Positions 32,701-48,900 of a stretch of DNA of 64,000 nt are shown in pieces; the first letter of the stretch is position 1, and each line of letters begins with the position of its first letter. The DNA lies in NCBI RefSeq assembly GCF_003704095.1, contig NW_020846727.1:372001-436000 (forward strand), in the 5' to 3' direction. The DNA comes from Pocillopora damicornis (taxonomy: Eukaryota). Below the pieces are notes generated by a model. That model had not been told where the DNA came from and ran no database searches. It worked only from the letters and a program-made list of their open reading frames with translations. The position numbers and the translations under genes are program-made.

Positions 32701-35700
32701 AAACATGTTTTCAAAGTTAAAAGTGGTTTTTCCTTTATGATTATTATTTTTATTATGCTTATTTTCTTAATGATAGCATTATATCTCTGCAGCATGTAGA
32801 AAAACACTGGTGGCGTCTTCTGGTTTTATCTTATCACCTTACTATCCTGGGTTCTATGCACCTAATTCCAGTTGTAATTGGCTAATAACCGCGCCAGTTA
32901 GTCATGTGATACGTCTTGAGGTACTGGATTTTCAACTGGAGCGTGACCCGCGATGTGCTACTGACCACCTTGAGGTGACTGATGGGAACACAGTAGGTGA
33001 AAAAAACTTGGGAAGATACTGCGGAGATGAAATTCCGAAACTAATGCAGTCCACAAAAAATACACTGCACATAGCGTTCAGGTCGGACATGAGCGTCCAA
33101 CGAACAGGCTTTAAAATACACTATTCATTTAAAGGTTTGTCAGAACACTTTATTATTTTATGGTTATTACAGACACAGTGTCTTTTCCAATTTCGACCTT
33201 TCCTCGCACATTGTGCATATTATTAAAACTCTTCACAAATATGTTTAAAGATAATCAATTAGTTGCTAGGGTCCCATAAGTGAAATCCTGTCAATTATTT
33301 CAGTATCTCATACGTTGAGATTTTATTTTTTTGTTCGTAAACACAGATTGATCGTATAACTACCGCCCATCCCTCTTTTTTTCCTTCTCCACAGTACAAG
33401 CTGAGGATAGTGCATGTAGCAGCAAACGAGGTAATATCTAATGTCATCGGTATAACTTTTTAAGCTGAGTAAAAACTTTGGTTTCTTTGGTTTCATCGGC
33501 TAAGGAAGATGCCTATTTCTCAACTATCTGTAGAGTTCAGTATCTCTGCATTACAGAATGTTTATGTGAAGACTCTTTAATTGCAGATTTCTCCTATCTC
33601 AAATAATAATTGCTTCTAATCCTATTTTATTCACTTCAGATTGCCCATCAGGCTGTTCGTGCTTCCAGACAACTCTCGGAAATTTTTTTGTCCAAGGTTT
33701 TGATCTAAGAACTGTTCCGGGAAACATGCCATCCTACACAAAAGCCTTGTAAGTCTGTCATACTTTTTTGACACATGCGTGAGAAATGTCACAAGTTATT
33801 GCACTAGTAGATTGAAACTGCTGCAAATAAAGCTGGTTGTTTTCATGGAAACATTTCAAATTTCCTCTACCACAAGAATTGTACATAAATTCGTGTTTAA
33901 TAACATTTCAGGCTCTTTGCAAACAACAGAATTAACCTGATTCAGGAGAAAGCTTTTTCAAATTTGCCGCTGTTGGAGTATATGTAAGTCTCTAGATCAT
34001 CTTTTTAATTTTCAGCATCGTTTTCGCAAGTCAAAAAGTTTTTTTGTGGACTTTTGACTCTTTATGGCGATATATTTCGACAAATCTTATCAAAACACGA
34101 TTACATAGATTTGTCAAAGAAGTTCTTATCAGACATTGTAGGGAAAAATTTCCTGACAGGACCACTGTCACTTTTATTAAGTTTGACATCATACCAATGT
34201 TAACAGTTATCATGGAAAATCGTAAAGATCGTGATTAGTCTAGAATAAGTCACAAGTATCTTCTTTTTTATCTTAGAGATCTCAGTAGAAATGTAATTCT
34301 GATGTTAGCTGATTCTTCGTTTCAAGGATGTCAGAATTTAAAAACCATGTAAGTTAAGCGGCTTTGATTTGCGTTACACTTACACCCTATGTAACTAATA
34401 AACATCCCCGCGTTACACAGAGATTTCTTTGTTTCAGCACGTGAAGCTCGCATGTTCGTCCTCAGGAGAAATTGTTATGTGTTTGCAATTTTAGTGTACT
34501 TGGCGTTTAAATCAGTAAATCAAGTGTCCGTTATTTTTACCGCAAGCCTGGTATTGCCAAGCCAGACCCGAACTCTTTGATATACATCGTACATCCCTGT
34601 TAAATCCTGGATGTTTGAGATTACCTTGAAATCGTCAAGTTATGGAAATTTTCTCTAATTCCTTGTTCTTACTTCCTTGTTATAACTCCTCAGAAGACTG
34701 ACTGGAAATTTTGTCAGGAAATTGTCTTTAAATGTCTTTTCTCACCTTCACAATCTAGAAGTCCTGTGAGTATATTTTTTATAAATATTTACAAGAAAAA
34801 GGGAAGAAACCTTTATTACAACAACTATACCTTATATACCTTATATGCAAGATTTCCTCTCAGTGATATCTATTATATTGTATTTCTTCAAGTATAACAT
34901 GCACAGCTGCTACTTATTTGCATTTTACTGTTTGCTAGTACGTACGTACGTACGTACGTACGACACTTTTTTCCAATTCTCCTTATCTGTTTTTTCTATG
35001 ATAGAATGCTTTTAATGTTAACCTCGTAAAAATTTCTTGCGGAAAAACCAAGCAATAATTGTCAACATAATATTTTTGAAAATTTATCATGAATCACAGA
35101 GATCTTGGAGAGAACCTCTTAACTGTGATCCCAGAGGGAACATTTTCTCACTTGCTCAATCTTCGCGTGGTGTGAGTACAATTACTAATCATAAAATATT
35201 GCTTAATAGCATAAGAATACTGATTGTCAGTTCATATTGTCATTAAACGGCTAGATCAGAGCATCTGAATATTGAAAACATTAAAGTGTATCAACGTAGT
35301 TTTTAGTCTTCATTACCATCTTCCCTCCATCTGTTCGAGGATATTAGACAGTTTTAGATACAAGTTGTTTCCTTATGAGATGAGAGTAACGATTTGTCGC
35401 TGAATATCCCCAGTTTAAAACTTTTTACTTGGTCCTATAGATCTACCTGAATTCAGTTGCTATATTTTGCCAAGCAAACACGTGTTTTTAATTTCTCAAC
35501 AGAAGTTTGAGGTCTAATGAAATAAGGTCTCTGGAGATGAAAATGTTTAGCCAGCGGAGTAATTTAACATATCTGTAAGTTTCTTCTGATCGTTTACCAA
35601 TTTATCTTCACCCTAATTCTTTCCAGAAGCCTTTTGCGAAGTCATTATTAGGTTGCATAGTTCATTGTCCTATTTCATATCATCGTCATTATTCGCTTCG

Positions 35701-38700
35701 ATTCGTTCAAAAAATGCGATCAAAAATGTATGATTGATCGAACGATCTGTGAGAGTGCGCTGTTTCATCAAATCAAACTCGGTGACTTTGGTGTGCACAT
35801 TTCCTCATATCAATTTGATGACCACTCAGTTAAGCGACCACTCTGTAGACAACCTCTCGTTGTCATTTCTGGGGTGACTGCACCACCTTTGTGGTAAAAC
35901 GTTTAACAAACTTCTTAGGGGAAAATTCTCCAGAAAAACCGTACCTCTGGGGAAGCATTTATTTGTATAGCTCAGATGGCTTAATTCCCTCTTAGGAAAA
36001 TTTCCCTTGTGTCGTGCATCTGGGAAGCGACCATGTACGAGATCATGCGAAATACGTGTACAATACATCCGTATTTTTAACTTTTGGCAAAGTAACGTTT
36101 AAGATTCTTAGCAATTTGACCACCAACATATTTTAAAGTTCAAACATATAAGCAGTTCAACCATTAGATATTTTTTCTCATCAGATATCTTCAGGATAAC
36201 TTGATTGAAGTAATTCCGGACAAATTATTCAACAATCTTGGAAACCTAAAAGTTCTGTAAGTATCTTTTAACATTGACATACTTCTCATCTCTCATCTTA
36301 TGAGGATTCTCACTAGTGATGTTGTTAAGTAATGGTAATAGGACTGAGTGGAGTCCAATTCGGTCTGTAATCATACGAGTGCTAACAAAATCGGTCGACC
36401 GCGCAGCAGGAGTCCGATTTGTTTATCACCCGTATCATTACAAACCGAATTGGACGACATATCCTCTCTTTCTCCATTTCTTTGTTCTTCCACATACTTT
36501 CGTATTTAAAAGGGAGTAGCAAATGACCTGATTGTGCATTTATATGCAAGTGTAGTCAAATCTTGAAACTATTTCCATTCTTTGTCTTAGCTACCTGAAC
36601 AACAATAAGATAAAAAGGATATCAATGCACACCTTTGAGGGATTAATGTCATTACACACTCTGTGAGTATATGTGTGTGTACCTTGTCTCTTTCACGCTT
36701 TTGCAAGCTTATTAATACCGTAAGGTTACTCATGAAAGCGTAGAAATGAGAATTGGTGGGATTTAAATAGAACTACCCTCATTGTGACTTTTAAGGCTTT
36801 ACCACGATCACCAACGTTTTTATTTTTTACCTCAATCCGCAGTCTGCGTAAATATCAGGGGGAAAAAACATTTTTGTCATCATGGCTCACTAACCTTTTT
36901 TGCACACGTGAGCCATTCGACTTTGCATTATCTCAAAATATCTAAGAACAGAATGTTTTCGTCGGGATAATTCATCACGTCGGCGATTGACGGTATTCTT
37001 CTCTTGTCATATGATTCAGGTATCTAGACAATAACAGGATAGTGGACCTCCCTGCTGAAACTTTTCATGCTTTGGGCAGTTTACGAAAACTGTAAGTGAT
37101 GTTAAAAAAACACATTTATCCCTCAGTTATATAATCAGAAAACTCAACAAAACTTTGATGACCTTGGCGCATCCTCGCCGATTCAACGGCTTGCGTATAT
37201 TTTACCCACTCCTCGAAGGGTTCATTATTTCCCAAGGAGTAAATAACAGAAGGAGTCCGTTTTATTTTTGTTGGTAGTTTTATGATGAGACCATGTATCG
37301 ATTTTTTCTCATAAGACAGCTCCAGAAGAGAATCACATGATCGCATCAGGGCCGTTCATACGAGAAAAATATCTGTGGCTGACATTAGATGCAAACCCTT
37401 CCGTCTGACCGATACATTTCCACTTTATTTTCCTCTCGCAAAAGGCCCTAGTGACTCTCTCTGGACTCAATTTACTTCCATTCAGCCTTTGAATAACGAA
37501 CGATAATGCAGTCTTCAGAGTCATAAACAAATTTTCTGGCTAATCAAATGAACTTTACTCTGTCACATTTCTAGTTACGTTATATGATAACTAAAAATCG
37601 AGACCAAACAGCTTACAACGATAAATATAACAGTTTTGTGCTGACAGAATGACAAAAATATGCTTCTACTGCCAATGATAACCCCCCAACGTCAGAACGG
37701 CTAGTTTTTATTAATAGGTGATATCATTATGGGGGTAGGTGATATTATTATGGGGGAAGCCTGCAGACTTGCAATGAAGACAAATACTGCTTTCTTTCAG
37801 CACCATGGATCATTTCACCCACTGCTGTTATGCTGTTACTACAATTCCTCAATTACAGTGTGATGCTCCTGCCGATGGTTTCTCAAGCTGTGATGACCTC
37901 ATGAAAAATAAAACTCTCCAGATATTCATATGGATTCTTGGAATCTCAGCATTCGCAGGGAATTTGATTGTGGTTCTTTGGAGATGTTTCTTGAAAGAAG
38001 ATAATCGCGTTCACTCATTCCTGCTAACAAATTTAGCGATATCTGATTTTCTTATGGGGATATACTTATTAATAATCGCCATTAAAGACACTCAGTGGCA
38101 GGGAGTGTATTTCAAACATGACTTATCCTGGAGGACAGGTAAACTGTGTCAGTTCGCCGGCGTGTTATCCATGGTTTCAAGTGAGGTGTCTGTGGCAATG
38201 TTGACAATTATCACAGCCGACCGACTCATATGCATAGTATTTTCATTCAGATTCAGGAAGCTTTCTTTCAAGCGTGCATGTTTTTTGTGCACAGTTGTGT
38301 GGCTCTTAGGAATCACGATATCCACAGTGCCACTGATGGGAATTGATTATTTTAATGACACGAAAAAAGGTGTAGGTTTTTATGGTCGTTCAGCCGTGTG
38401 CCTTCCTCTCCAGTTGTCATCTGACCGACCAGCAGGTTGGGAGTATTCTGTGTCTTTCTTCATCGCCTTTAATTTCGTGGCTTTCATGTTTATGCTTGTT
38501 TCTTACATTGCTATGTTCGTTAAGGCAAAGAAAATTGGCGGAGCCGTCAGATCGACCAACGTTAGAAACGAGACTGCTATGGCGACAAAAATGATGTTCA
38601 TAATCCTCACAGACTTTTTCTGCTGGATACCAGTCATCATAATCGGAATATTATCTTTAACAGGAAGACTGTATGATCCAAAGCAGCTTGTATATGTTTG

Positions 38701-41700
38701 GATAGCAGTTTTTGTTCTTCCTGTGAATTCCTCCATCAATCCTCTTCTTTACACATTTTCTACAACCGCCTCCAGGAAAAAGTTGAAAACTCTGACGGGA
38801 ACGATGAGCTCATTTATAAGAAGAACTCATTCTTCAGGTGAGGCGATTTCATGAATTCAAACGACTGTTTTCTGTTATCGTTTTCTTCATCTCAATGTTC
38901 TGTGATCATATGGAAACGTTTGGGGATTTAGTGAACTTAGATCGAAATAAAGATTATTTCATTGTTTCGTGTTTTTGGTTAATAGCGTCCTCCCTGGTGA
39001 CGAAATCGTGAAGTTAAGGGACGAACTTTCTTTTCGATAAAAGAAAGTTTATCGGAAAACTCAGCTATGAACTTTAGGGTTAACTCAAATATCCCTATCA
39101 AGCACCCATATGAAGAAAAGAAAAACGCCTTTTGTTGAGAAAATCATCCTGAATTGTGTAGACTACAGCCTGACAGTGGTTCACTTCAGTAGCAGATATG
39201 CACGATGAAAGGGTTTTTTTTCAGTGTTAATGCTAAGTTTGATTGGACTATAAACGATTGAATGGGTTAATGTAGATCGGAATTTGGAGATTTTCGCGAA
39301 ATTTACTTTCGTTTGACACGAAAAACACGTCTCCTATTTTCGAGAAATAGAGTTATGTAAAAATGAGTTACATTGCATTACTTCACTTTTTATATGTCCA
39401 GACTTCTTACACAAAGTCTTGGTCTGGTTTCCGGAAAAAAATCTAATCGATTTTAACACGGTGCTATTGGAATCAAATAGCAGCAAAATACATATACAGT
39501 TGAGTTATGATTAAAAATTTAAACTTCATAATAATCCTTTCTACAGGAGGACGAGGAAGATTAGATACACACCTTGATATAACATTGTCAACCGTGACTC
39601 CTAACTTGCCTGACAGAAAAACAGCCATTGGAAAGACTGACGTGAAGATTATTGAATTTTGTGACATATTTAATGACTGCAGCTCCAATCAGTCTATGGT
39701 AAGTATTTAACCTGACATATCCACAGCCAAGTGAACGCATATTTGTATTTGTGAGAGCCTTGCCAGCTTGTTCTCCTAACAACAGATTTATACCCCATTC
39801 ACACCAAAGCTTGGTCTCTCAAAGTCCAACCCTACGTCCCCGTCTTGAGAGACTGGGGCGCAGCCAATCCTCTGTGTAGTGGATACAGTGGTAAGGTAAG
39901 GTAAACTTTATTTTACCATGGTGGCCCAATGAGCCGTAAGGCTGATATCCAGAGCGCCCCTGGAGTAAAAGGAATAGTAATTTAAAAATAGAGGATGTAA
40001 TAATTTAAAAATACAAAATGTTAAAAATTGTGAGTATTCATCAAAAATTTAAAGGAAGAAAGTGACTCCGCGTTCTGAGTATAACGAAGCAACAAATTAA
40101 AAAGGGCTGTGCCCAAATATTTAAAAGTTCGTTTCCCAAGGCTTAGGTTTGGTTTGGGCATCTTCTGCGAGTGTCATAGCTATGTACATTGTAGTCTCTA
40201 ACAAAATAGGTACATAAATACTGAGGTACTAGCTTATTTAAGCATTTATAAACTAAAACACATTTGTGTCTTTTCCGTTTCATTTCTAACTCAGCCACCC
40301 TAAAACATTAAAAGTGTCTTTAGTGGAGTCACACCTAAAAACTATGCAAGCAGCACGATTTTTTAACCGTTCAAGGGTTTTGCTGGGGGTGGATGACAGT
40401 TCACCTCATGTAGTGTTGGTATAACACAGGATTAGCTCGATAAGGGTATTATAGGCGCACATCGCTGCCTTAAGAGTAAGGCAAGGTCTTATCCATGCTA
40501 AAAGTCCCAAACGCTTGTTGACTTTGTTACAAATAGAGTCGGTATGCTCTTTTCAGTGAAGCTGTTCATCGAGACCTCAAGATAATCGATATATGTCCTT
40601 GCCTTGGATCTGCAGAATAAAGTCTGATGAGTTTTGCAATAGTTGCTTTGTTCCAAAGAGTAGGCCTTTCGCTTTGATCAAATTAGTCTTAGTATTAGTC
40701 TGCTTCTCATCAACCACTGGTCGACTCGTTTGAGGTCTTGTAGATTTTCTCTGATGATGTTGATATCGAACCCAGTATAATAGATCACTTCGTCATCGGC
40801 ATACATACTTATCGCCGAGTGTAGCAAACATTGAAGGAGGTCGTTTATGTATATCACAAATGGCAATGATTCCAGTAAGAAAACTTGAGGAACGCCGAAG
40901 TCTAGTGGATTACAGTAGGATTGATTAATTCCAGAACAAGCGACTTGAGAGGAAAAGGTTGCCTATTAGTCAAGGGATGACGCAGCGCAGACAGAGCAGA
41001 CTGGACCCTATGCAGTCGACACCTTTTCTCTCTCCTAAGTCCACGTTCACATTCGGAACTTGGAATGTAAGAACTATGTTCTAACGAGAAAGGACAATTA
41101 TTGTTGTAAATGAAATGAAGAGATACGGTCTGTCAATTCTTGGACTTCGTAAAACAAGATGAACATCATGTAGGGAAGTGAAAATGGCAGATGGCACTAC
41201 CATCCTACACTCAAGGAACCAAGACGACGGAGCTCCTGACACGAAAGGCGTTGCCTTCATGATAACACTATATGCGTAAAGCCATGATCTCTTCGGAACC
41301 AATCATCTCAAGACGTATTACAGCCTACTTCAGGACCACACACAAGAAGATAAGATCATGGATAATACAATGCTATGTACCAAACAAATGGTGCCGAGGA
41401 TGACGATAAGGACAACTTGTACAACTTACTGAGGCAGGTGATCAGCAAGTCAGAAGAGAAGGAAATGACGACGCCGGTTATGGAAGTAGCAGCAGAGGAC
41501 AGGTGAACAGGCGATGGGCAGTGTGGGATATGAACAAGAATGGAGAACGATTATCTGATTTCTGTGCTGATTTCGGGAGGGTAATAGGGGGAGAATTTTT
41601 CCCCTCAAAAGCGCACAAACTCACTTAGGTCTCACCTAACAACACCGCAGAGAACCAAATCGCAAATGTGGAAGTGTGGGAGGAAGAACATCTGCCTCAG

Positions 41701-44700
41701 GAATGGTATAGAAGCTACATCGCGAAGCTCTACAAGAAAGGCAATCTCCGGGACTGTAAAAACCATCAAGGGATGTCACTGATGTTAGTAACTAGAAAGA
41801 TATTTAACCGAATCATGTTATTGCGACTCCAAGAAGCAGGTGATGCCAAACTACGAGATAAGCAGGCTTGATTTAGGAGAGGAAGATCTTGGACTGACCA
41901 AATAGCTACATTACGACATTACGTATTATCATCGAGCTGTCAATCGGATAGAATACACCGCTATAAATTAACAACAATGACTTTGAAAATGCTTTCGATG
42001 GCCTCGACAGAAAATCTATTTGGCGACTAACGAAACATTACGAGGGAATCAACTCATGGAAAGAGTAACGGTATCCAATGGACACTGTGGCAACAAACAG
42101 ACAAAGTCGACTTTGCCGACGATATTGCTCTTCTCTCCAGTACCAAATAACAAATGCGAGACAAGACAACTCTTTCAAAAAATGCCAGCAAGCTAGGACT
42201 ACGACCAAATGTAATGAAAACCCAGATATTGAAGAGCAACTGCAACAACAAGACATCTATCACTATCAGGGACAACACCTAGGAGGATTCTTCATCCCTT
42301 GTCTAAATTGAGATTACTGTGAGCAGATTTGGTGGGACAGACAGGACAACAAATGCTAGGATAGTTTTAACATTTTGAAGAAGTATGTTCAGCCCACACA
42401 ATGAGAAGTAAACCCAAACTGAGAATATTTAATTCAAATGTGGAGTCTGTTCTGCCCTACGGGTCCGAAACCTGGAGAGCGGCGAAGAAATCCACCAAAA
42501 ATTACAGAAATTCGTCAATCATTGTCTCAGACGCATCTTAAAAGTCAGATGGTCAGATAGGATATCCAATTAAGTGCTGGGGGAAAGAACAGGAAAATAG
42601 CCAATTGAAAATCAGATTTTCAAGAAAAAATGTAAATGGAGGGTATACCCTAAGGGAGTATGCAAACAACATCACGAGGCAAGCAGTAAAATGGAACCCA
42701 CTAGGAAAATAGGTCGCCCCAAGATCACATTTACAAGAGATATAGAGTCAGACATGAAAAGATAGAACTACATATGGCACCAGCTGGAAACGGCAGCCTC
42801 TGACAGAAGTAGATGGAGGACGTAAATCATCAATGGCCTACGCTCCACCAAGCCAAAAGTTAAACTAAAAGCACCAAAGTTTGGAAATGTTTTAAATCTG
42901 TTTCTTGAACTCGGCTTAATTTTTTTTTGACAAAAGCTGCTTAAACCAAGTTTGTTGACTTCAAATTCAAGTTAGTGTCTATTTGAAACCTCTGAAAAAT
43001 TCAGTTCTCTCTTTTTGATTTTCATTCATCTAAACCTGGTTTAACTAGACATGTTCTGCTGGTGTAAATGGGGTTTTAAAATCCTGTAAGTTACATTTAG
43101 TCACAAACCCTCAGGTTCCAAGTTTTCCGGCTACCTTAAGTCTTAGCCGACTGCACTTTCATATGACTCACATGTATGCCATCAGATATTGGTTAGAACT
43201 AACCAGTTATATAACCTTTGTGCACAGGGATATGCTACTTGCTGGGTGGAAAAAGACAGTTTGGAAATGTGCCTTTTGAAGTACTTTACAAGATCCAAAG
43301 AGAAAGACTGGAAAAACGAAATTGAAATTTTAAAAGAAATAGCTAAAAATGGTGCACATGACAACCTGATTGCATTCCGCTGGCATTCAGAAGGTAAGTC
43401 CATTTTGATATCATTATTAGCTCGTTGGAAATCAAATAAGGCGATGCAATTGTTGTGCTATTTTTTCATTTCAGTGTGTGATGTCAACATTGGTTTTCAA
43501 AAGACCAAGCTACCATCCATAAAGAACGCTAGCTTGTAAGTAGTAAATTAAACTGCCCAAAACTTTTCTAAATTGTTTGAAACTATAATTCCTCGAAACA
43601 AACCAAAAATCGAAAAAAGAAAATCAAAAGAAAAAGAAAATAGGTCCTTTTTGAAATTAAGAAGTTAATATGCTAGGAGCTATCGCTGAGCCAAAAATGT
43701 CTTAAAGCTGGCTTTAGCTATTTCAAAATTAACAGGTTTTTCTTTGTAGGTTAATTTGCTTTGCCTTTGTGTCAAGCACCTCATTGAGCGATTTCCTTGA
43801 CGAAGGTGTTGGAAGATGTGAACCAACAATTACCCAACTACTGATTGTACTTTTGGATGTTGTCAAGGCTGTTGAACACCTTCACAAAACAGGAATATGT
43901 CATAATAATATTTCTCCGTCCAACGTACTCGTTTCCTTCAATGAAGGGGTAAGCTTACCTTAGCTACGCAAGTCGATAAGATACAAGCTGAAGTTGATTC
44001 GATACACCTAGAAAGTTGATTCGATACACCTAGAAAGTCCTTTGGATACAACTACAGTCATTTCGATACAATTTAGTAACGGAGTAATTGGATTTTTCAT
44101 GAGACTTCCGTTTTGTTTACACCGTAATGAAGCGGTATCAGTATGCCAATCTGCTCATTTCTTAGAAACCTACTTAATAGTAACCCATACTCATTTAACA
44201 CTGTTCATATCACGGCTCTAAATGATTTGACGGGTTGGCGAGCGGCCTCTGCCTCTGATTGCCTCAATGAGCACATTTGATCAATAAATTCATCCGTCAT
44301 GCATTTCCATACCTGAGAGATGATGTATTCAGTGAATGACACAGATATAATCGGAGGAAGAAACCTTCGAGTGCTCCCAATAGGAGTGGAACCAAGGACC
44401 ATCTGGTTGGTTCTTCAGATGCTCTACCACTGAACTATAGGAGACTCATGGCAGGCTAAGCCGTTTAGCTAAGTCCATGGTGACGAACTTACTGTCCACT
44501 GCTAGAATGGGAATGTTAAATGTAATGCTTTTGCGCAATGATGATGAAAATAGAATTGGTAAATGTTAAGCTTAGGTCTCTTTACAAGCACTAGACACTT
44601 CTCACGTTGTCTTAACGCAAACTTCCTCTGACTTTTAGGTTCGACCAGTGAAAGGAGTACTTGGAAACTTTGGACGAGCCTTTTTGCTTAAACAAAATGA

Positions 44701-44968
44701 CAACTCTTCCTTTTTGCGCCAAGAAGATCTTCGACAATTTCGCAAATTGATGGAAACAGTTGTTGGTTACAGCAATTCTGCACGGAAAACAAATGAGGTA
44801 AGTGTAGCAGTGAATAAACAAAGAATCGAAAGTATCTCATTGTTGATGGAAAAATGTTCTCACTCTTCATTGGGGAATTGTAGATCAAGGAGATTCTTGC
44901 ACTGTGCAAGGGCAACGAGGACGACACACGAGACGCCACACATATCCGGGAAACACTTCAAAGAATAA
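5307..44968 (+). CDS. Giant multi-exon LGR type-C (RXFP/GRL101-like) GPCR with mosaic ectodomain and C-terminal pseudokinase domain (~56 coding exons, ~3,300 aa)
   Basis: Hand-traced exons with compatible phases: 5307-5385, 5669-5710, 7484-7609, 13137-13393, 14366-14453, 14851-15231, 15680-16093, 16388-16494, 16587-16875, 17757-17947, 18307-18485, 18564-18739, 18948-19034, 19307-19482, 20048-20120, ~20207-20338, 20432-20682, 20780-20888, 21167-21388, 21660-21782, 21936-22013, 22175-22312, 22389-22639, 22789-22888, 23242-23328, 24065-24306, 24713-24812, 25163-25524, 26214-26355, 26453-26649, 27112-27240, 27952-28093, 28645-28950, 29368-29508, 29597-29834, 30241-30383, 30767-30997, 31587-31837, 32387-32495, 32793-33134, 33395-33430, 33640-33748, eight 72-nt LRR exons within 33912-37091, 37801-38837, 39547-39698, 43228-43393, 43475-43535, 43750-43948, 44639-44968. 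No in-frame stop is needed. The first two exons and the exact 3' end are least certain. Confidence 0.8.
7484..14453 (+). CDS. MAM domain 1 (exons 7484-7609, 13137-13393, 14366-14453)
   Basis: NCTFERDLCGWTN..DDLDWIRYRGSSPTKLTGPSRDF / GHYIYI..ARLKSP..QCMTFYYNFYG..VWIKSGHWGDRW / IIVEGVRG..GDAALDQF..GSC match the MAM consensus. A 5.5-kb TE-filled intron splits the domain. Confidence 0.9.
7644..7697 (+). repeat. 27-bp tandem duplication
   Basis: gtaatagataactgtactcgagtgaat x2. Confidence 0.85.
7770..8290 (-). mobile_element. Tandem pair of tRNA-derived SINE-like repeats
   Basis: Two degenerate copies of ..ccaatagg.(c)tcgaacc...gaccttcc(g)atta...gatgct..accact...tgctag.a...gaatgtcgaat.tgatgc. Reverse-complement B-box (GGTTCGA). 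Same family as 11640-12200 and 44330-44572. Confidence 0.65.
8400..9222 (+). mobile_element. Degenerate BEL/Pao LTR-retrotransposon fragments (protease and integrase pieces)
   Basis: FLAFRTVLVVLRNEDRKIKVNALLDEDS resembles the BEL/Pao aspartic protease. 9060-9222 reads, with frameshifts, PGEMSSDNG.NFVAA.K.L and NPPQAPNF.GV (integrase). Confidence 0.7.
10424..11546 (+). mobile_element. Young Gypsy-type LTR retrotransposon with 97-bp LTRs; internal region collapsed into an N gap
   Basis: LTRs 10424-10520 and 11450-11546 (TGTTG...CAACA, 2 mismatches). 5-bp TSD CAGTT at 10419-10423 and 11547-11551. PBS TGGTGGCAGCGGTGGGAT at 10521, PPT AAAAAAGGGGAAA at 11437-11449. Gag start at 10595 and integrase C-terminus LLAYRSTPL..FSPAQLLMGRKLR..TPRSY..VRRNR ending at 11359. 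Confidence 0.95.
11640..12200 (-). mobile_element. Tandem pair of the same SINE-like family, with a 24-bp internal duplication
   Basis: gactcgaacccacgaccttccgatc..ggatgctctacca..gtgacaaacgt.c.gc.tactgc motifs occur twice; tcaaacctaggatcttccaatttg is repeated at 11691-11738. Confidence 0.65.
15680..16093 (+). CDS. C-type lectin-like domain exon
   Basis: CYPGWKAVGSTCLRF..TWDGARAFC..LGGDLA..YVGF..WIWNDG..CGAL..DC....GFICE; single phase 1-1 exon. Confidence 0.9.
17757..18739 (+). CDS. PA14-like domain exons (17757-17947, 18307-18485, 18564-18739)
   Basis: RELWY..DNYGERLTAYLKVPKSGNYTLSLSCGDECELW..VYL....LYALQVYMK....CLSVG..EPI resembles the PA14 pattern (YG.R...Y..P..G.YTF....DD..ELW). Confidence 0.7.
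20432..24812 (+). CDS. Divergent MAM 2, LDL-receptor class A repeats (2 canonical plus 1 degenerate), MAM 3 and MAM 4
   Basis: MAM 2: IESPLL..GLCLRFKF..LIWKLRGHQG..IVVDNITI. LDLa: CSPNDYQCDNGEC..SQRCDNDVNCMDGSDEKGC and C....LSC....CVP...LCNGFDDCSDGKDE. MAM 3: CSFENGFCG..TGPSYDHT..YIYIEAS..ARL..CLQFWYHMFG..GDIAIDDI. MAM 4: CYFDDKICNW..ITSP..CMRFWY..IDIDDV. Confidence 0.9.
23776..23970. mobile_element. ~195-bp MITE-like element
   Basis: Imperfect terminal inverted repeats ttagtatatactaaaa (23776-23791) and ttttagtgaatactaa (23955-23970). Confidence 0.6.
24390..24600 (+). mobile_element. Penelope-like retroelement fragment (RT C-terminal/linker region)
   Basis: ENKYLDRVFSKNNYNEDFI....TTETIPYIRGISENIS...QPFN resembles the E..L..VF..N.Y..FI / TIPY..G.SE.I motif between RT and GIY-YIG. 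Intronic. Confidence 0.65.
25163..28093 (+). CDS. Two F5/8 type C (discoidin) domains
   Basis: Domain 1: PLGMQNGRI..SAITASS..RARL..QWLQVDFG..VATQG..WVTKY..IFDGNFD..AQFVRIYP..CLRVEYYGC. Domain 2: PLGMQNGQIP..RARL..QWLQIDLG..TQGR..ARFLRIHP..LRIEIYGC. Confidence 0.93.
28645..28950 (+). CDS. WSC-like cysteine-rich module exon
   Basis: GCYKD...R......C.......VFSVQNGGQC.....YNRYGKSTQC...GRGGPWANQVY follows the WSC-type GCY.D..Q.G..C..GG..AN.VY pattern; phase 1-1 exon. Confidence 0.75.
29597..30997 (+). CDS. Pentraxin/LamG-like domain (exons 29597-29834, 30241-30383, 30767-30997)
   Basis: AMTVCYWL..WHHVCASWSSQLGFWKIYKDG..LTGVNMWDHNL...EVYRLS..C....GNILRW, including the pentraxin HxCxxW signature. 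Confidence 0.88.
30418..30469 (+). repeat. 13-bp tandem repeat x4 (gtgccacagctga)
   Basis: gtgccacagctga gtgcgacagctga gtgccacagctga gtgccacagctga is directly visible. Confidence 0.9.
32793..33134 (+). CDS. CUB domain exon
   Basis: C..TL..SSGFILSPYYPGFY..NSSCNWLITAP..HVIRL...DFQLE....C..DHLEV.DG.......GRYCG..IP....S..N.L.I.FRSD......GF. Confidence 0.95.
33640..37091 (+). CDS. LRR N-cap plus eight leucine-rich repeats, each on a 72-nt phase-2 exon
   Basis: CPSGCSC cap at 33640-33748. Exons 33912-33983, 34277-34348, 34694-34765, 35100-35171, 35503-35574, 36185-36256, 36591-36662 and 37020-37091 each encode xLxxNxIxxI.xxxFxxLxxLxxL. Confidence 0.93.
34938..34963 (+). repeat. (GTAC)n palindromic microsatellite
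   Basis: gtacgtacgtacgtacgtacgtacg in an LRR intron. Confidence 0.9.
36331..36458. repeat. Palindromic (hairpin) MITE-like repeat
   Basis: gtccaattcggtctgtaatcatacgagtgctaacaaaatcgg pairs imperfectly with ccgatttgtttatcacccgtatcattacaaaccgaattggac around a short loop. Confidence 0.7.
37801..38837 (+). CDS. Hinge plus rhodopsin-class 7TM domain, LGR type C (relaxin receptor/GRL101-like)
   Basis: CCY..QC..P.DGFSSCDDLM hinge, GN in TM1, NLAISDFLMGIYL in TM2, SSEVSV..L..I..DR in TM3, FYGRSAVCLPL in ECL2, TDFFCWIP in TM6 and LPVNSSINPLLYT in TM7. Donor G|gtgagg at 38837. Confidence 0.96.
39547..44968 (+). CDS. Cytoplasmic protein-kinase-like (pseudokinase) domain exons fused to the GPCR
   Basis: Exons 39547-39698, 43228-43393, 43475-43535, 43750-43948 and 44639-44968 give CLLK (beta3), DWKNEIEILKEI (alphaC), HDNLI, SLSDFL, LDVVKAVEHLHKTGICHNNISPSNVLV (catalytic loop), GVLGNFGRA (DFG position), EDLRQF (alphaF position) and ISLLMEKC (alphaH-like). 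Confidence 0.82.
40020..40930 (-). mobile_element. Decayed non-LTR (CR1/L2-like) reverse transcriptase fragment
   Basis: Minus-strand GVPQ..PFVIYINDLLQCL.HS.ISMYADD..IY and downstream HTDSICNKVNKRLGLL.WI, with many stops. Confidence 0.7.
40940..42850 (+). mobile_element. Decayed RTE-like LINE (AP endonuclease and RT remnants)
   Basis: TFGTWNVRTM and KGVAFM in the endonuclease region. VWEEEHLPQEW...IAKLYKKGNLRDCKNH.G, LRDKQA*FRRGRS.TDQI, DFADDIAL and LPYGSETW in the RT region. Frameshifts and internal deletions throughout. Confidence 0.8.
43991..44037 (+). repeat. 22-bp tandem duplication
   Basis: aagttgattcgatacacctaga x2. Confidence 0.85.
44330..44572 (-). mobile_element. SINE-like repeat in a pseudokinase intron
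   Basis: cgagtgctcccaataggagtggaaccaaggacc..gatgctctaccactgaactataggagactc..gtgacgaac..tgctagaatgggaatg, the same family as the copies above. Confidence 0.7.
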
Positions 44969-45978
44969 GTAGCTCCCTAAAGGATAGTGCGAGGTTCTAA
45001 CACAGCCAAGCATCGCAACGACAAAATTGTACCTACAGTTGCATCTAAATGAGAATCTCACAATGCATGCATGTATTAAACATGATTTGTTTTCATGTAA
45101 TGACGTAACTAGTAATATTTCTACAGTCGAAAGGAACCATATACTTTTTTCAACCTTTATACACTATTATGTTGGATTGTAGATTAGTCGCATTTTTTTC
45201 CAGTAATTCCTGTAGTTACACACAGGATACGTGTTTACGCAAGGCAGTCAAAATTATCCAGACAACGCCGATTATTTCACTCTTTTGATCTTAAATACTC
45301 AATTGAGTATGTTACCTAAGAACCCAAGTTTTAAGCAAAATAATAGATCTTGGTTTATTAGATACTGCACAGGGAAGTTTGTTGAGAAGACGTTTAACCT
45401 TTTGACTGATTATTATTATTATCATTATCATTATTATTTTTTTTAGTTGACTTCTGATTGCGCCAAGCCAATCACTGGGTCGAGTCTGTCGACCTCGTTC
45501 TGATTTGTCTGACAAATAAAGGTCTATATCGGACAAATATCTCCGGTTGTGTTGAATGACTTTTCATTCAAAGAGATAATAATAGAACGAATGAAATTTA
45601 TCTCCGAAAATTCTTTGAGGGGGAAACGAAGAGAGGAGATATCGTAGTTGCGAAATTTACCCATAAAACCTTGATAACCTGGTAAGAAATTACCCGACAC
45701 GACTATGAGGACTAGGTTGTTTAAACCGGGATAATTTACCCTGCATCTTTACCCCAACATCTTTTTTATGACTTCTTCGTCGATTTACATTACATTTTTT
45801 TTTAATAAAAAGATACTATCTTTCTATTTGTGGTATTATCGAGTCATAAAAATTCAACCAAAACTGCGGCTTCAAAATGTACCACACTATAAAACCTTTG
45901 TGTATATTGCAGGAGTCTGTTGCTCTCAGCAGGTTTAAAAACGTTTTTCAGAAAAGTTCCGTGTAAAAATTATTCAAA

Positions 45979-48900
45979 TCAAACAAGTGTACTATTGATA
46001 GGCTGAACTGAATAAACAGTTACTTTTCCTAACTGTGGATTGCAAACAGAATACTTAAAGAATGTCCAACCATGTGCAGCAGCTCCTAAAACACAGGGAA
46101 AACAATCAGAAATGTATTCTCAGGAAAGGTAATGGATTTCATGGTTCAAAATTTACAAATCAAATTTAACAATCAAAAACAGCAGAACTTACCAAACTCG
46201 CCATCCTTGTTGACTACTACCAAGCCCCCACTATACTTTGGGTAATATTTTGCTATTCGTGTAAGAGCTAGTGTTGCTGCTTCTGTTGGACTTTTACCCT
46301 GACGCATGAACTCAACTGCCTGAAAACTGCACCAAGAATAAAAGAAGAAAAAAATCCTCTCAGTTAAGTTGTGCAATTGTTAATTATTAAAGCTTAGACA
46401 AAAAGCGTAATTTCCTTCATTGGGAATAAACTGTTGGCTGATAAGAGCTAGTGGACAATGCTTAGTATGTTCTGGTAACCTAAGGAATAGCGGCCAGTGG
46501 CTGCATCAGTTCTTTCATTTTTATTTGGTTAGATTTTAAATATCAGCAATAATATAAATAGCTGGGTGCCAATATTTTCATACTGTCAACGAGCCCCTCT
46601 CCACAAAAGGTTCATTTATGACCAGGATTTAATCATTAAACCTGAAATACCTCTATTTGCAACCTGGCAAAAGTGGCCTTTTACCTCGGAAGAAATCGCA
46701 TCATGATATCTCCATCGCCTGTTGCAGCAGCACCGCCTACCTCATTATCAACGTATGCTCCAGCTCCAGCAATGGGTGAGTCTCCCACACGCCTGTGCAA
46801 CAAATAGATAAATAAAAAAAAAAGTAGTTTACTGGTAAAGTAAGACAGGAAAAGACTAAACAGCCACAGTTTTCTTGGACAACCATCTTCACTTCTAAGT
46901 GTTGGTCTGTTTAATGAGTTGATAGCAAAGAAAAAATATCAAAAGAAAGAAAAAGGAAAGGGACAATACATTTTCAGAAAAGCACTGGAAACAAACACAT
47001 GAAACTACACACTGCCACATTAAAATGCTTCTAATTACCAGTACTTTGACTCGGCTGTTCTCTTACCCGGGAATCTTGTGGTTTGCTCCATTTGTACTTG
47101 TTCCTGCAGCAATGTTCCCAACTCTGTCCACTACAATCATACCTGAAAAATTAAATATGTTATCTATATTGAGTGGAAAAACACAAAAGTTTTCAGTTAC
47201 TATCTTCCAGACTTGCATATTATTGGTCATTTATAAGCAAAAGGATCAGTCCATCAATACCAGCCCAAGTCAGGTGCAAAAAAGGCTCAATATAGGGATC
47301 TTCTCCTTACCAATTGTATCATGATTTTGCCGCCCAATGTCTGAATGTGAAGTCGGCCTTGAACTTTTCCGTTCCCTGTGGAAACCAATTATTAATTAAT
47401 ACTTAGACAATAAAGCCTATTCTTGCTCTCTGAGACTGTGGTTGACAGACAGAACATGAATTTTCACACCTTTACAGCAACATTCTAAGCTATATATGAA
47501 GGGTCTGGATATCGTAGAACATAGCACTGTTCTGAATGACTGTCATCCAGTTCAACATATACTGTTTGAACAACAGTAGTTCGGTCCCTGCTAAGGTTAA
47601 GTAAAGCTGGTTAAGCAATGAATCTTTCAGTTTGAGTGTGTTGAATTGATAAACTGTAAGCACTGTTGGTGGGTAAGAATAAACTTACCCTGTCACAGGT
47701 TTGTAAGGACCACATGACTGATGAGGATCAGGAACCACGTCCTTATAGCAAAGGAATGATAATCAGTTCTGAACAATAAGCATTTAGTTACTAGGCATCT
47801 CAGTAAGCAATACAGTCCTGACATCCGAAAGAAACTATAATCACATCTTAACTGAAGCCACATAGAGCTCTTCTAGAAATATACCACCTATATAATATGA
47901 ATACAAGATACTATTTCAAATCTCCAGTTGCCCCTGCAGCATGGTTCAAAGTGACATGCAAATGCATTAAAGAAATAAATAAATAAAACAAAGAAAAATA
48001 TTTTACCATGTCAACTTTACCTTCCAAAAGTTGGGTTGGCAATTATTCTTTTCCCAGTCTCTCCACATCTGCCTGAAAGTCATAAAATAGGGTTGTAGAC
48101 AATAAAATTGGCTGATGTAGCACTCATCTAGTTCAGTGTTGTTTTAGCTGACCCATTCCACAGCTCATCAAAGAGCAGCCAAAGTAAAAGAGAGTACAAC
48201 TTAATATGAAGCATGGTGTTAGGTTGTCAAAACAATACAGGACCCAAGATTATAAGTTTAATCAAGAAAATGCAAACCATAGAATGCAGCTTGAACTACT
48301 GACCGACACAAAAAACACAGGATTAATGCTTAACTCTCCAAAAATCTGTTGCATGTAAAAATACCATGGGCATTTGTGAAAATATTTCATCTTAATTATA
48401 TTTTCTCATTATACTTTTACCAATAACAATTACAATTTTTTTAATTGCGTTAAATACATTTCATTATTGTTTATTCATTTCATTACAATTTTTCATTGTT
48501 TTTGCCTACAGAACTGAGTGTTAGAAGCATTGTTCACATGTTATTACTCTCTAGCTTGCATACCATGAGTGGTTAGTGTGCAAGTCTTCATTTGTGAATC
48601 CCATCTGCACTGCAAACTGGGTAGCTTTTAGAAAAAACACAACATATCTATGTTAAATGAATGATTGTCTTGTTTGATGCAGTACATCGTCAATGTCATC
48701 ACTTCAAGATATCCTCTCATTATTTCACAGTGCCATAATTTCCTTACTCCACCATTCCACCTCTAGGAATGGTCTGGATTCTACTTTGTCTCCCAGAATA
48801 TTCCAAACATTTTGACAATTGGGGAGTACCCACCAAAGCAGCCTCTTTGCTAGCTCTTGCAAGAGTCACCAATTTCACCTCATCCCACTTATATGAGCAG

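What the first reader, a model, noticed from the sequence alone, without database searches (positions are those of the whole stretch)
43228..44968. The fused kinase is a pseudokinase with both catalytic aspartates replaced by Asn
Seen: the catalytic loop reads HNNISPSN instead of HRDLxxxN, and the metal-binding motif reads NFG instead of DFG. No GxGxxG loop precedes beta3. Only ~15 residues separate NFG from the alphaF-like EDLRQF, with no APE. The beta3 Lys (LLK), alphaC Glu (KNE) and catalytic-loop Asn are kept, and the frame is open with intact splice sites. Established: loss of the HRD and DFG aspartates normally abolishes phosphotransfer. Inference: the domain is maintained as a fold, acting as an allosteric switch, nucleotide sensor or docking site, rather than decaying.
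Basis: partly seen in the sequence, partly recalled or inferred. Interest (0 to 1): 0.8.

Follow-up and report, generated by a model that had tools for sequence, protein, structure and literature searches.

The report
Conserved dead-kinase tail on a coral GPCR
The last six exons of a giant coral cell-surface receptor gene encode a trimmed protein-kinase fold that has lost its catalytic residues. The domain has been kept by selection in corals and sea anemones, so it probably works as a docking or switching module and not as an enzyme.

Summary
Exons at 43228-45000 (+) encode a kinase-like domain. It reads HNN for HRD and NFG for DFG, and has no glycine loop, no APE and no alphaG. The beta3 Lys, alphaC Glu and catalytic-loop Asn are kept. 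All splice sites and phases fit, back to an LGR-type 7TM exon at 37805-38837. The true stop is 44998-45000, not 44968.

**It is not private decay.**
- At least 10 paralogous tails occur in this genome, 8 of them 2-3 kb behind a 7TM exon.
- Relatives occur in other corals, Nematostella, Actinia and Exaiptasia.
- Nearly all lack the DFG Asp.
- HN is present in 65 of 68 family fragments.
- Lys and Glu are invariant.

**Selection.** Tail dN/dS against the closest non-identical orthologue is 0.28 (bootstrap 0.20-0.38). The 7TM gives 0.13.

All five non-Pocillopora orthologues read HND with NFG or SFG. The HRD Asp-to-Asn change is therefore recent, while the DFG loss is ancient.

**Fold and literature.** An AlphaFold model of a Nematostella member matches kinases at Z about 21. 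I found no paper describing this family.

**Limits.** The spliced protein of this gene was never joined, searched or folded. The scan's only other note on this is the companion finding on this same stretch.

The parts
37805..38837 (+). Rhodopsin-class (LGR/GRL101-like) 7TM exon. Its donor GT is at 38838 and it leaves phase 1. This is the upstream context of the tail.
   Evidence: Pfam 7tm_1 E 6e-30. Donor and phase. Orthologues are 76-100% identical.
39547..39698 (+). Linker exon that ends in beta1 and the degenerate P-loop (VKIIEF..IFNDCSSNQSM). It enters in phase 1 and leaves in phase 0.
   Evidence: Conserved in orthologues L034 (64%), L025 and L035.
39699..43227 (.). 3.5 kb intron holding retroelement debris (about 40000-42700). 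The equivalent intron is 0.9 kb in orthologue L034.
   Evidence: Short reverse-transcriptase-like ORFs on both strands. Spacing is identical in the Tara scaffolds L030/L031. L034 exon positions.
43228..43393 (+). Exon A: beta2, beta3 (LLK, Lys at 43279-81), alphaC (KNE, Glu at 43318-20) and beta4 (RWH).
   Evidence: Lys, Glu and Trp are invariant across 12-14 family members.
43475..43535 (+). Exon B: a roughly 20-residue insert between beta4 and beta5.
   Evidence: Present in orthologues and as a separate block in the paralogue mRNA.
43750..43948 (+). Exon C: beta5, hinge, alphaD, alphaE and the catalytic loop HNNISPSN (43901-43924).
   Evidence: Pfam Pkinase 75-132 at E 3.6e-6. His and Asn are invariant in 11 of 11 own-genome copies.
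44639..44797 (+). Exon D: beta8, LGNFG (Asn at 44666-68), a 16-residue remnant of the activation segment, and alphaF (EDLRQFRKLMETVV).
   Evidence: Orthologues read NFG or SFG. Paralogues read GGFS, GGLS or GGFG.
44884..45000 (+). Exon E: alphaH-alphaI (IKEILALC..THIRETL). The protein ends in SARF, with stop TAA at 44998-45000.
   Evidence: Orthologous exons end in NTRL or NTRF followed by a stop.

Best explanation
Window 39547-45000 (+) encodes the cytoplasmic C-terminal domain of a very large LGR/GRL101-like rhodopsin-class GPCR. Upstream exons in the window encode MAM, LDLa, F5/8-C and CUB domains.

**What the domain is.** It is a genuine eukaryotic protein-kinase fold of TK/TKL-like ancestry that no longer catalyses phosphotransfer. 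Family-wide it lacks:
- the GxGxxG loop, of which only the third Gly remains;
- the DFG Asp;
- the activation loop, P+1 loop and APE;
- helix alphaG, which together with the activation segment forms the substrate platform.

On the Pocillopora branch it has additionally lost the catalytic-base Asp (HND to HNN).

**What is retained.** Selection keeps the fold's core and the beta3 Lys / alphaC Glu pair.

**Most likely mechanism (inferred, not shown).** The tail is a non-catalytic signalling module. Ligand-driven rearrangement or clustering of the receptor repositions or dimerises the tail. The tail then docks or allosterically regulates a cytosolic partner, such as an active kinase or an adaptor. 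In most family members a C-terminal [ST]-x-[LVF] motif would add PDZ-scaffold anchoring. Residual cation-independent nucleotide binding through the retained Lys-Glu pair is possible but less likely.
For: **Shown**
- Motifs and an intact GT-AG, phase-consistent gene model.
- Kinase homology: Pfam on exon C and on spliced relatives. A family profile against PDB sequences gives JAK, ITK, BTK and EGFR at E 2e-11 to 3e-8.
- Fold: the AlphaFold2 model of Nematostella member P0114 has pLDDT 79.7 and pTM 0.79. It matches FGFR2, GAK, KIT, SYK and JAK kinases at Z about 21, rmsd 2.6 A over 228 residues. Only two helices follow alphaF.
- Breadth: at least 10 paralogous tails in this genome, 8 of them 2-3 kb downstream of a 50-61% identical 7TM exon on the same strand.
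- Relatives in Nematostella (XP_048584250.1, 3282 aa, from ectodomain through 7tm_1 to tail), Actinia and Exaiptasia.
- A 1483-nt intron-less RNA-type contig (L033) carries TM5-7 and the whole tail in one ORF. It maps in 7 collinear blocks on the paralogue locus L014.
- Invariant Lys, Glu, His-Asn and LG.F.
- The position equivalent to the HRD Asp varies freely across 68 fragments: N 49, D 7, A 3, H 3, G 2, K 2, S 2.
- Purifying selection: omega 0.28 (0.20-0.38) for the tail against 0.13 for the 7TM, window versus L034.
- HNN/NFG is identical in two independent Tara Pacific scaffolds, so it is not a sequencing error.

**Inferred**
- The docking, allosteric and dimerisation role.
Against: - The join of 7TM to tail here rests on phases, on collinearity in orthologues, and on a paralogue's mRNA from another species.
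- The structure was predicted for a Nematostella relative that is 30-38% identical to this gene's exons, not for this protein.
- No partner, nucleotide-binding or activity data exist.
- Orthologues with HND leave room for atypical catalysis in the wider orthogroup.
- In one orthologue locus (L025) no LGR 7TM lies within 6 kb upstream of the tail.
- The parent kinase group is unresolved, because many TK, TKL and other kinases tie at Z 20.6-21.3.
Confidence: 0.8

Rival explanations
1. The domain is an atypical but active kinase that phosphorylates without the canonical Asp residues. The precedents are CASK, which has GFG and is Mg-independent, and WNK, which has a displaced Lys.
For: The beta3 Lys, alphaC Glu and catalytic-loop Asn are retained and invariant or nearly so. 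Orthologues keep the catalytic base as HND. Both observations would fit residual chemistry in the orthogroup. The CASK and WNK precedents come from my own knowledge.
Against: - This gene lacks both the catalytic base and the metal-binding Asp.
- It also lacks the P-loop glycines, the activation and P+1 loops, APE and alphaG.
- The base position varies freely across the family as N, D, A, H, G, K or S. That is not expected of a residue used in catalysis.
Confidence: 0.05
2. The exons are a decaying relic: a dead former kinase tail, or a retroelement-disrupted gene end, that is no longer part of a functional protein.
For: - A 3.5 kb intron full of retroelement debris separates the linker exon from exon A.
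- Both Asp residues are lost.
- The last exon is only 47% identical to the nearest non-identical orthologue.
- The PDZ-ligand-like Thr at position -2 is lost here, giving SARF.
Against: - The frame is open across six exons, with all GT-AG sites and phases intact.
- Omega is 0.28, with a bootstrap upper bound of 0.38.
- The same exon structure is kept in orthologues that are 76-88% identical in the 7TM and in anemones.
- The retroelement is intronic and is shared by the Tara scaffolds.
Confidence: 0.03
3. The tail is real and conserved, but in this species it is a separate gene or an alternative transcript and is not fused to the GPCR.
For: - There is no RNA evidence for this locus.
- Old Nematostella and Actinia gene models give stand-alone proteins of 188-293 aa.
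- In L025 no LGR 7TM lies within 6 kb upstream. A small minus-strand GPCR sits there instead.
Against: - Exon A starts in phase 0 without a Met, and the linker exon continues the phase-1 end of the 7TM exon exactly.
- The order 7TM then tail on one strand holds at 8 paralogue loci and in orthologues L030/L031, L032, L034 and L035/L036.
- The mRNA-type contig L033 and RefSeq XP_048584250.1 carry both parts in one ORF.
Confidence: 0.1

Closest known systems
GPCR-kinase fusions: GPCR-TKL/K of acanthoecid choanoflagellates, oomycetes and amoebozoans, and GPCR-TK of choanoflagellates and sponges (PMC12716839)
   Same: A 7TM domain is followed in the same polypeptide by a C-terminal kinase-fold domain of TK/TKL-like type. 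None of these fusions has been characterised functionally.
   Different: - Here the 7TM is a rhodopsin-class LGR/GRL101-like domain (Pfam 7tm_1) behind a giant MAM/LDLa/CUB/LRR ectodomain.
- The host is a cnidarian. [quoted passage not shown]
- The kinase fold here is trimmed and lacks catalytic residues.
JAK JH2 pseudokinase domain
   Same: It is a TK-type fold with the HRD Asp lost (HGN), and it serves as a regulatory module attached to receptor signalling. JAK1 JH2 and JH1 were the best profile hits.
   Different: JH2 keeps a fuller C-lobe and binds ATP. It regulates an adjacent active JH1 domain. No active kinase domain is present in this protein.
Receptor pseudokinases (HER3, PTK7, ROR, RYK) and the kinase-homology domain of receptor guanylyl cyclases
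   Same: These have an intracellular dead or weak kinase fold on a cell-surface receptor. It acts by dimerisation or allostery (my own knowledge).
   Different: Those are single-pass receptors with full-length kinase folds. Here the receptor is 7TM, and the fold lacks the activation segment and alphaG.
MLKL pseudokinase
   Same: Both the HRD and DFG motifs are degenerate (HGK and GFE), while the beta3 Lys is used for a regulatory contact (my own knowledge).
   Different: MLKL is cytosolic, is fused to a four-helix-bundle executioner domain, and has a complete C-lobe. No specific similarity was found here.
CASK
   Same: It has a DFG Asp substitution (GFG).
   Different: CASK retains the catalytic base, the activation segment and substrate binding, and it is active without Mg (my own knowledge). 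This tail lacks all of these.

Membership tests
Eukaryotic protein kinase fold (Pfam clan PKinase) | Bilobal kinase fold with beta1-5, alphaC, alphaE, a catalytic loop and alphaF | tested here: met
   Exon C gives Pkinase E 3.6e-6 and PK_Tyr_Ser-Thr 25.1 bits against a 23.1 cut-off. The AlphaFold model of family member P0114 matches FGFR2 and others at Z about 21, rmsd 2.6 A over 228 residues. The fold was tested on a relative, not on this gene's joined protein.
Catalytically competent protein kinase | Glycine-rich loop GxGxxG | tested here: not met
   The stretch reads IFNDCSSNQSMGYATCWV. Only the third Gly is conserved family-wide.
Catalytically competent protein kinase | beta3 Lys and alphaC Glu | tested here: met
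   LLK and KNE are present. The Lys is conserved in 12 of 12 and the Glu in 13 of 13 aligned members.
Catalytically competent protein kinase | HRD catalytic Asp | tested here: not met
   The window reads HNN, with AAT at 43907-09. Orthologues read HND. Across the family the position is N 49, D 7 and other residues 12.
Catalytically competent protein kinase | DFG metal-binding Asp | tested here: not met
   The window reads NFG. Orthologues read NFG or SFG and paralogues read GGFS, GGLS or GGFG. The one exception seen is Exaiptasia VDFS.
Catalytically competent protein kinase | Activation segment ending in APE, plus alphaG | tested here: not met
   Sixteen residues lie between NFG and alphaF, with no APE. 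The model of P0114 has only two helices after alphaF.
Pseudokinase (kinase fold lacking at least one catalytic residue, conserved) | Kinase fold, missing catalytic residues, and evidence of selective maintenance | tested here: met
   The fold and motif rows above apply. Omega is 0.28 (0.20-0.38). The family spans corals and anemones.
GPCR-kinase fusion receptors | 7TM and kinase fold in one polypeptide | tested here: inconclusive
   For this gene the evidence is phase-exact exons and conserved collinearity, with no RNA. The feature is met in relatives: mRNA-type contig L033 and Nematostella XP_048584250.1.
GPCR-TKL/K of choanoflagellates (PMC12716839) | 7TM domain clustering with that family's 7TM | not tested
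   No sequences of that family were at hand. The 7TM here is Pfam 7tm_1, rhodopsin class, whereas that family's 7TM clustered with no other eukaryotic GPCR. Common descent is therefore unlikely.
LGR type C / GRL101-like receptors | Rhodopsin 7TM with an LDLa- and LRR-containing ectodomain | tested here: inconclusive
   7tm_1 gives E 6e-30. LDLa x2 gives E 7e-19 at 21154-21420, and MAM, F5/8-C and CUB lie upstream. LRR was not searched in the window but is present in Nematostella relative P0063. A 59%-identical octocoral 7TM is named GRL101-like by NCBI.

The most novel reading that the evidence does not exclude
Hexacorallia possess a previously undescribed receptor class. It consists of LGR-type rhodopsin GPCRs with giant pattern-recognition-like ectodomains whose C-terminus is a built-in, trimmed pseudokinase, usually ending in a PDZ-ligand-like motif. 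This would be the first GPCR-kinase-fold fusion in eumetazoans. It is expanded to about 10 genes in Pocillopora. It would imply a G-protein-independent, scaffold-type output from a 7TM receptor, possibly in microbe or symbiont sensing.
Probability: 0.5. Interest if true: 0.75.

Novelty: new variant of a known kind. Interest (0 to 1): 0.6.

Why it matters
Pseudokinases and GPCR-kinase fusions are each known. However, the most recent survey (PMC12716839) places metazoan GPCR-kinase fusions only in sponges and notes that none has been characterised.

This case differs in several ways:
- A rhodopsin-class LGR carries a conserved, catalytically stripped kinase fold.
- The arrangement occurs across corals and sea anemones.
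- It is tandemly expanded in a reef-building coral.
- Pfam scores it mostly below threshold, so databases call these proteins 'uncharacterized'.

The family gives a tractable natural series of HND, HNN and other variants on a constant DFG-less background. That series can be used to ask what a pseudokinase tail does for a GPCR. Nematostella offers a genetic model to test it.

Tried and rejected
- **The search for homologous proteins on exon C** returned one protein only, because of the length window. Orthologues were reached instead through the 7TM exon and the representative library.
- **Single-exon PDB search.** The top hits were TBK1 entries whose catalytic loop reads HRN (4euu, 4eut). From my own knowledge these are engineered D135N mutants. 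I rejected this as a sign of TBK1/IKK ancestry.
- **DUF6953 on exon D** gave E 0.0035 and 17.9 bits against a 27-bit cut-off. I took it as chance.
- **Alignment A2** with the linker, B and E exon fragments misaligned them. I rebuilt it as A3 without them.
- **Many long top hits of the profile search** (P0001, P0011, P0012 and others) are multi-kinase proteins with HRD, scored by summed repeats. They are not family members.
- **Parent kinase group.** Foldseek and VIA give a flat tie among FGFR2, GAK, KIT, SYK, JAK, RAF and TNNI3K. Only 'TK/TKL-like' can be said.
- **Cluster look-ups** for spliced Pocillopora transcripts found none.
- **Joined protein.** The joined spliced protein of this gene was deliberately not built for any search or fold. 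dN/dS was computed by summing per-exon codon counts.
Full report
**Observation and gene model**

Reading the sequence and checking it by script gives a phase-consistent model on the + strand.

| Exon | Coordinates | Content |
|---|---|---|
| 7TM | 37805-38837 | Pfam 7tm_1, E 6e-30 |
| Linker | 39547-39698 | linker, beta1, degenerate P-loop |
| A | 43228-43393 | beta2, beta3, alphaC, beta4 |
| B | 43475-43535 | insert between beta4 and beta5 |
| C | 43750-43948 | beta5 to catalytic loop |
| D | 44639-44797 | beta8, NFG, alphaF |
| E | 44884-45000 | alphaH-alphaI, stop TAA at 44998-45000 |

Every intron is GT..AG. The three split codons read GGA, GTG and TTG.

- HNNISPSN at 43901-43924.
- LGNFG, with the Asn at 44666-68.
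- LLK, with the Lys at 43279-81.
- KNE, with the Glu at 43318-20.
- Sixteen residues between NFG and EDLRQF, and no APE.

It reads IFNDCSSNQSM|GYATCWV, so there is no GxGxxG. Exon C alone matches Pfam Pkinase positions 75-132 at E 3.6e-6 and passes the PK_Tyr_Ser-Thr cut-off.

**Genome**

G000 has 234.35 Mb in 4393 contigs. The published Pocillopora damicornis assembly is 234 Mb (PMC6208414). Two Tara Pacific metagenome scaffolds are 98-100% identical in protein across the locus. I infer a Pocillopora genome, but this was not proven.

**Paralogues in the same genome**

Exon C has 10 further copies at 37-48% identity, seven of them on contig C4228. tblastn of the separate exons shows the same exon set (A, C, D, E) at these loci.
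- All copies carry His-Asn in the catalytic loop.
- At the DFG position they carry GGFS, GGLS or GGFG.
- A search with the 7TM exon shows that 8 of the 10 tails lie 2-3 kb downstream of a 50-61% identical LGR-type 7TM exon on the same strand.

**Relatives elsewhere**

A profile of exon C against 1.84 billion representatives gave 87 hits at E<=1e-10. Most true family hits are single-exon ORF fragments reading HNN...

Spliced members are:

| Protein | Species | Length | Catalytic loop / DFG position |
|---|---|---|---|
| XP_048584250.1 | Nematostella | 3282 aa | HNA / GGFS |
| EDO39792.1 | Nematostella | 293 aa | HNH / GGFG |
| XP_031559296.1 and XP_031559293.1 | Actinia | 188 and 288 aa | HNH / GGFG |
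| XP_020909115.1 | Exaiptasia | 213 aa | NNN / VDFS |

The large Nematostella protein contains C-lectin, F5/8-C, LDLa, MAM x5, LamG, fn2, pentaxin, CUB, LRR and 7tm_1 domains ahead of the tail. All are named 'uncharacterized' or 'protein kinase domain-containing'. In the 3282-aa protein the kinase match is below Pfam's cut-off (21.6 against 23.1 bits), which explains why the architecture has gone unnoticed.

The Logan contig L033 (1483 nt, SRR13196817) holds one uninterrupted 417-aa ORF running from TM5 through the whole tail. It maps in seven collinear blocks (75-87% nucleotide identity) onto the intron-containing paralogue locus L014. This is transcript-level evidence, in a related species and a paralogue, for the same seven-exon layout and for the 7TM-tail fusion.

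**Orthologues of this gene**

Ranked by 7TM identity, the orthologues are as follows.

| Locus | 7TM identity | Catalytic loop | DFG position |
|---|---|---|---|
| L030/L031 | 99.7-100% | HNN | NFG |
| L034 | 88% | HND | SFG |
| L035/L036 | 83% | HND | NFG |
| L032 | 76% | HND | NFG |
| L025 | 7TM not in the locus | HND | SFG |
| L029 | 7TM not in the locus | HND | SFG |

Exon C is 57-77% identical within this group, against 35-47% to paralogues. The orthogroup therefore never has a DFG Asp, but all its non-Pocillopora members keep the catalytic Asp. The GAT/GAC to AAT change is recent.

The same pattern is seen in a second orthogroup: L002 reads HNG here, while other corals read HND or HNS. 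Over 68 family fragments the position is N 49, D 7, A 3, H 3, G 2, K 2 and S 2, while His-Asn before it is present in 65 of 68. A freely varying 'catalytic base' next to invariant structural neighbours is what a long-dead active site looks like.

**Selection**

I used Nei-Gojobori counts summed exon by exon.
- Window against L034: tail dS 0.55, dN 0.15, omega 0.28 (bootstrap 0.20-0.38). The 7TM gives omega 0.13.
- Against L032 and L025: pS is saturated (0.72-0.75) while pN is 0.25-0.28.

The tail is under purifying selection, weaker than on the 7TM but far from neutrality.

**Fold**

I therefore did not search or fold this gene's joined protein, and all searches were run exon by exon by reference.

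As a proxy I folded Nematostella P0114, using alignment A3 of spliced relatives plus the separate exon A, C and D fragments. The model has pLDDT 79.7 and pTM 0.79. Foldseek gave at least 500 kinase matches at probability 1.0. VIA-align gave Z 20.6-21.3, for example FGFR2 2psq at rmsd 2.6 A over 228 residues.

The secondary structure shows beta1-5, alphaC, an extra short helical insert (the exon B region), alphaD, alphaE, a short helix in place of the activation loop, alphaF, and then only two further helices. AlphaG is missing. The CW..P..RP-like alphaH/alphaI motif survives in paralogues (for example LCFE..RP) and is degenerate here (LCKGNEDDTRD).

Profile-sequence search puts JAK (both JH2 and JH1), ITK, BTK and EGFR on top, and PK_Tyr_Ser-Thr is the better Pfam model for several members. 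The ancestry is therefore TK/TKL-like, and no finer assignment is justified.

**Conserved residues**

Family-wide conserved positions are:
- the third P-loop Gly;
- L-x-K-x-F in beta3;
- W..E in alphaC;
- the beta4 Trp and a beta5 Cys;
- an alphaE Asp;
- G..HN in the catalytic loop;
- VLG.F..A at the DFG position;
- Q...L in alphaF.

Retention of the Lys-Glu pair over the anemone-coral split argues that an alphaC-in-like conformation, or nucleotide contact, still matters.

**Mechanism**

It is shown that the domain has a kinase fold, lacks the residues and elements needed for phosphotransfer and peptide binding, and is maintained by selection at the C-terminus of LGR-type receptors.

It is inferred that the domain acts as a non-catalytic output module. 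It could be a docking surface, or an allosteric or dimerisation partner, whose position or state is set by the 7TM. The 7TM itself keeps DR(L), CWxP and NPxxY. Most members end in a class-I PDZ-ligand-like [ST]-x-[LVF] (WDTYL, DSFV, NTRL, NTRF). This gene ends in SARF.

I put about 0.4 on scaffold or dimerisation without nucleotide, about 0.3 on a nucleotide-binding switch, and 0.05 on residual catalysis.

**Literature**

PMC12716839 reviews GPCR-kinase fusions. [quoted passage not shown] It notes that none has been characterised. The LGR evolution paper PMC4079206 describes cnidarian GRL101-type LGRs without mentioning a kinase tail. Other searches found nothing on this family. Absence from this library is not proof of novelty.

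**Loose ends**
- There are no RNA reads for this locus.
- L025 has no LGR 7TM within 6 kb upstream of its tail, and a small minus-strand rhodopsin GPCR sits there instead.
- The species behind the ENA and Logan records were not identified.

**Verdict**

The interpretation 'maintained pseudokinase' is supported, with the correction that only the DFG loss and the trimmed lobes are ancient, while the HRD Asp loss is a recent Pocillopora change. The thing is a new variant of known kinds, namely a receptor pseudokinase and a GPCR-kinase fusion.

Noticed in passing
window 39699-43227 (debris about 40000-42700): The intron between the linker exon and exon A is 3.5 kb and full of short reverse-transcriptase-like ORFs on both strands. 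The same intron is about 0.9 kb in orthologue L034, while the Tara Pocillopora scaffolds share the long form. This looks like a lineage-specific intronic retroelement insertion.
   Followed up: partly
window 44985-45000; L034:16691-16807; L025:13475-13588; L008, L009, L005, L011, L003: Family members end in a class-I PDZ-ligand-like motif: WDTYL, WDTHL, WDTVL, DSFV, NTRL or NTRF. This gene, and its 98-100% identical Tara copies, end in SARF with Ala at position -2, so the motif may be lost here.
   Followed up: partly
G000 contig C4228, about 234-526 kb (L013, L015-L017, L020-L022): There is a tandem cluster of at least 7 paralogous 7TM-pseudokinase genes. It includes partial copies: L020 has only the last third of a 7TM and two adjacent hits to overlapping parts of exon A, and L021 and L022 have tails without a detected 7TM.
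   Followed up: partly
L025:1-409 (-): In one orthologue's genome, a small intron-less rhodopsin-type GPCR on the opposite strand lies about 5.6 kb upstream of the tail's linker exon, where the LGR 7TM would be expected. No LGR 7TM lies within the 6 kb available.
   Followed up: partly
P0089 / P0159 (Exaiptasia XP_020909115.1, KXJ09395.1): This anemone member reads NNN instead of HNN but has an Asp at the DFG position (VDFS), the opposite pattern to the corals. The older model, named 'Tolloid-like protein 2', joins a CUB-like region directly to the tail without a 7TM, which is probably a gene-model error.
   Followed up: no
window 46173-47230 (-): Short minus-strand ORFs downstream of the gene look like exons of an asparaginase / N-terminal-nucleophile hydrolase gene. 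The same neighbour carries a Pfam Asparaginase_2 hit in orthologous loci: a weak hit in L030 and L031, and an unmarked (stronger) hit in L034.
   Followed up: no
window 20443-33223 (+): Upstream ORFs on the same strand carry MAM (x3), LDLa (x2), F5/8 type C and CUB matches. This is consistent with the giant ectodomain seen in the Nematostella relative. LRR exons were not looked for.
   Followed up: partly
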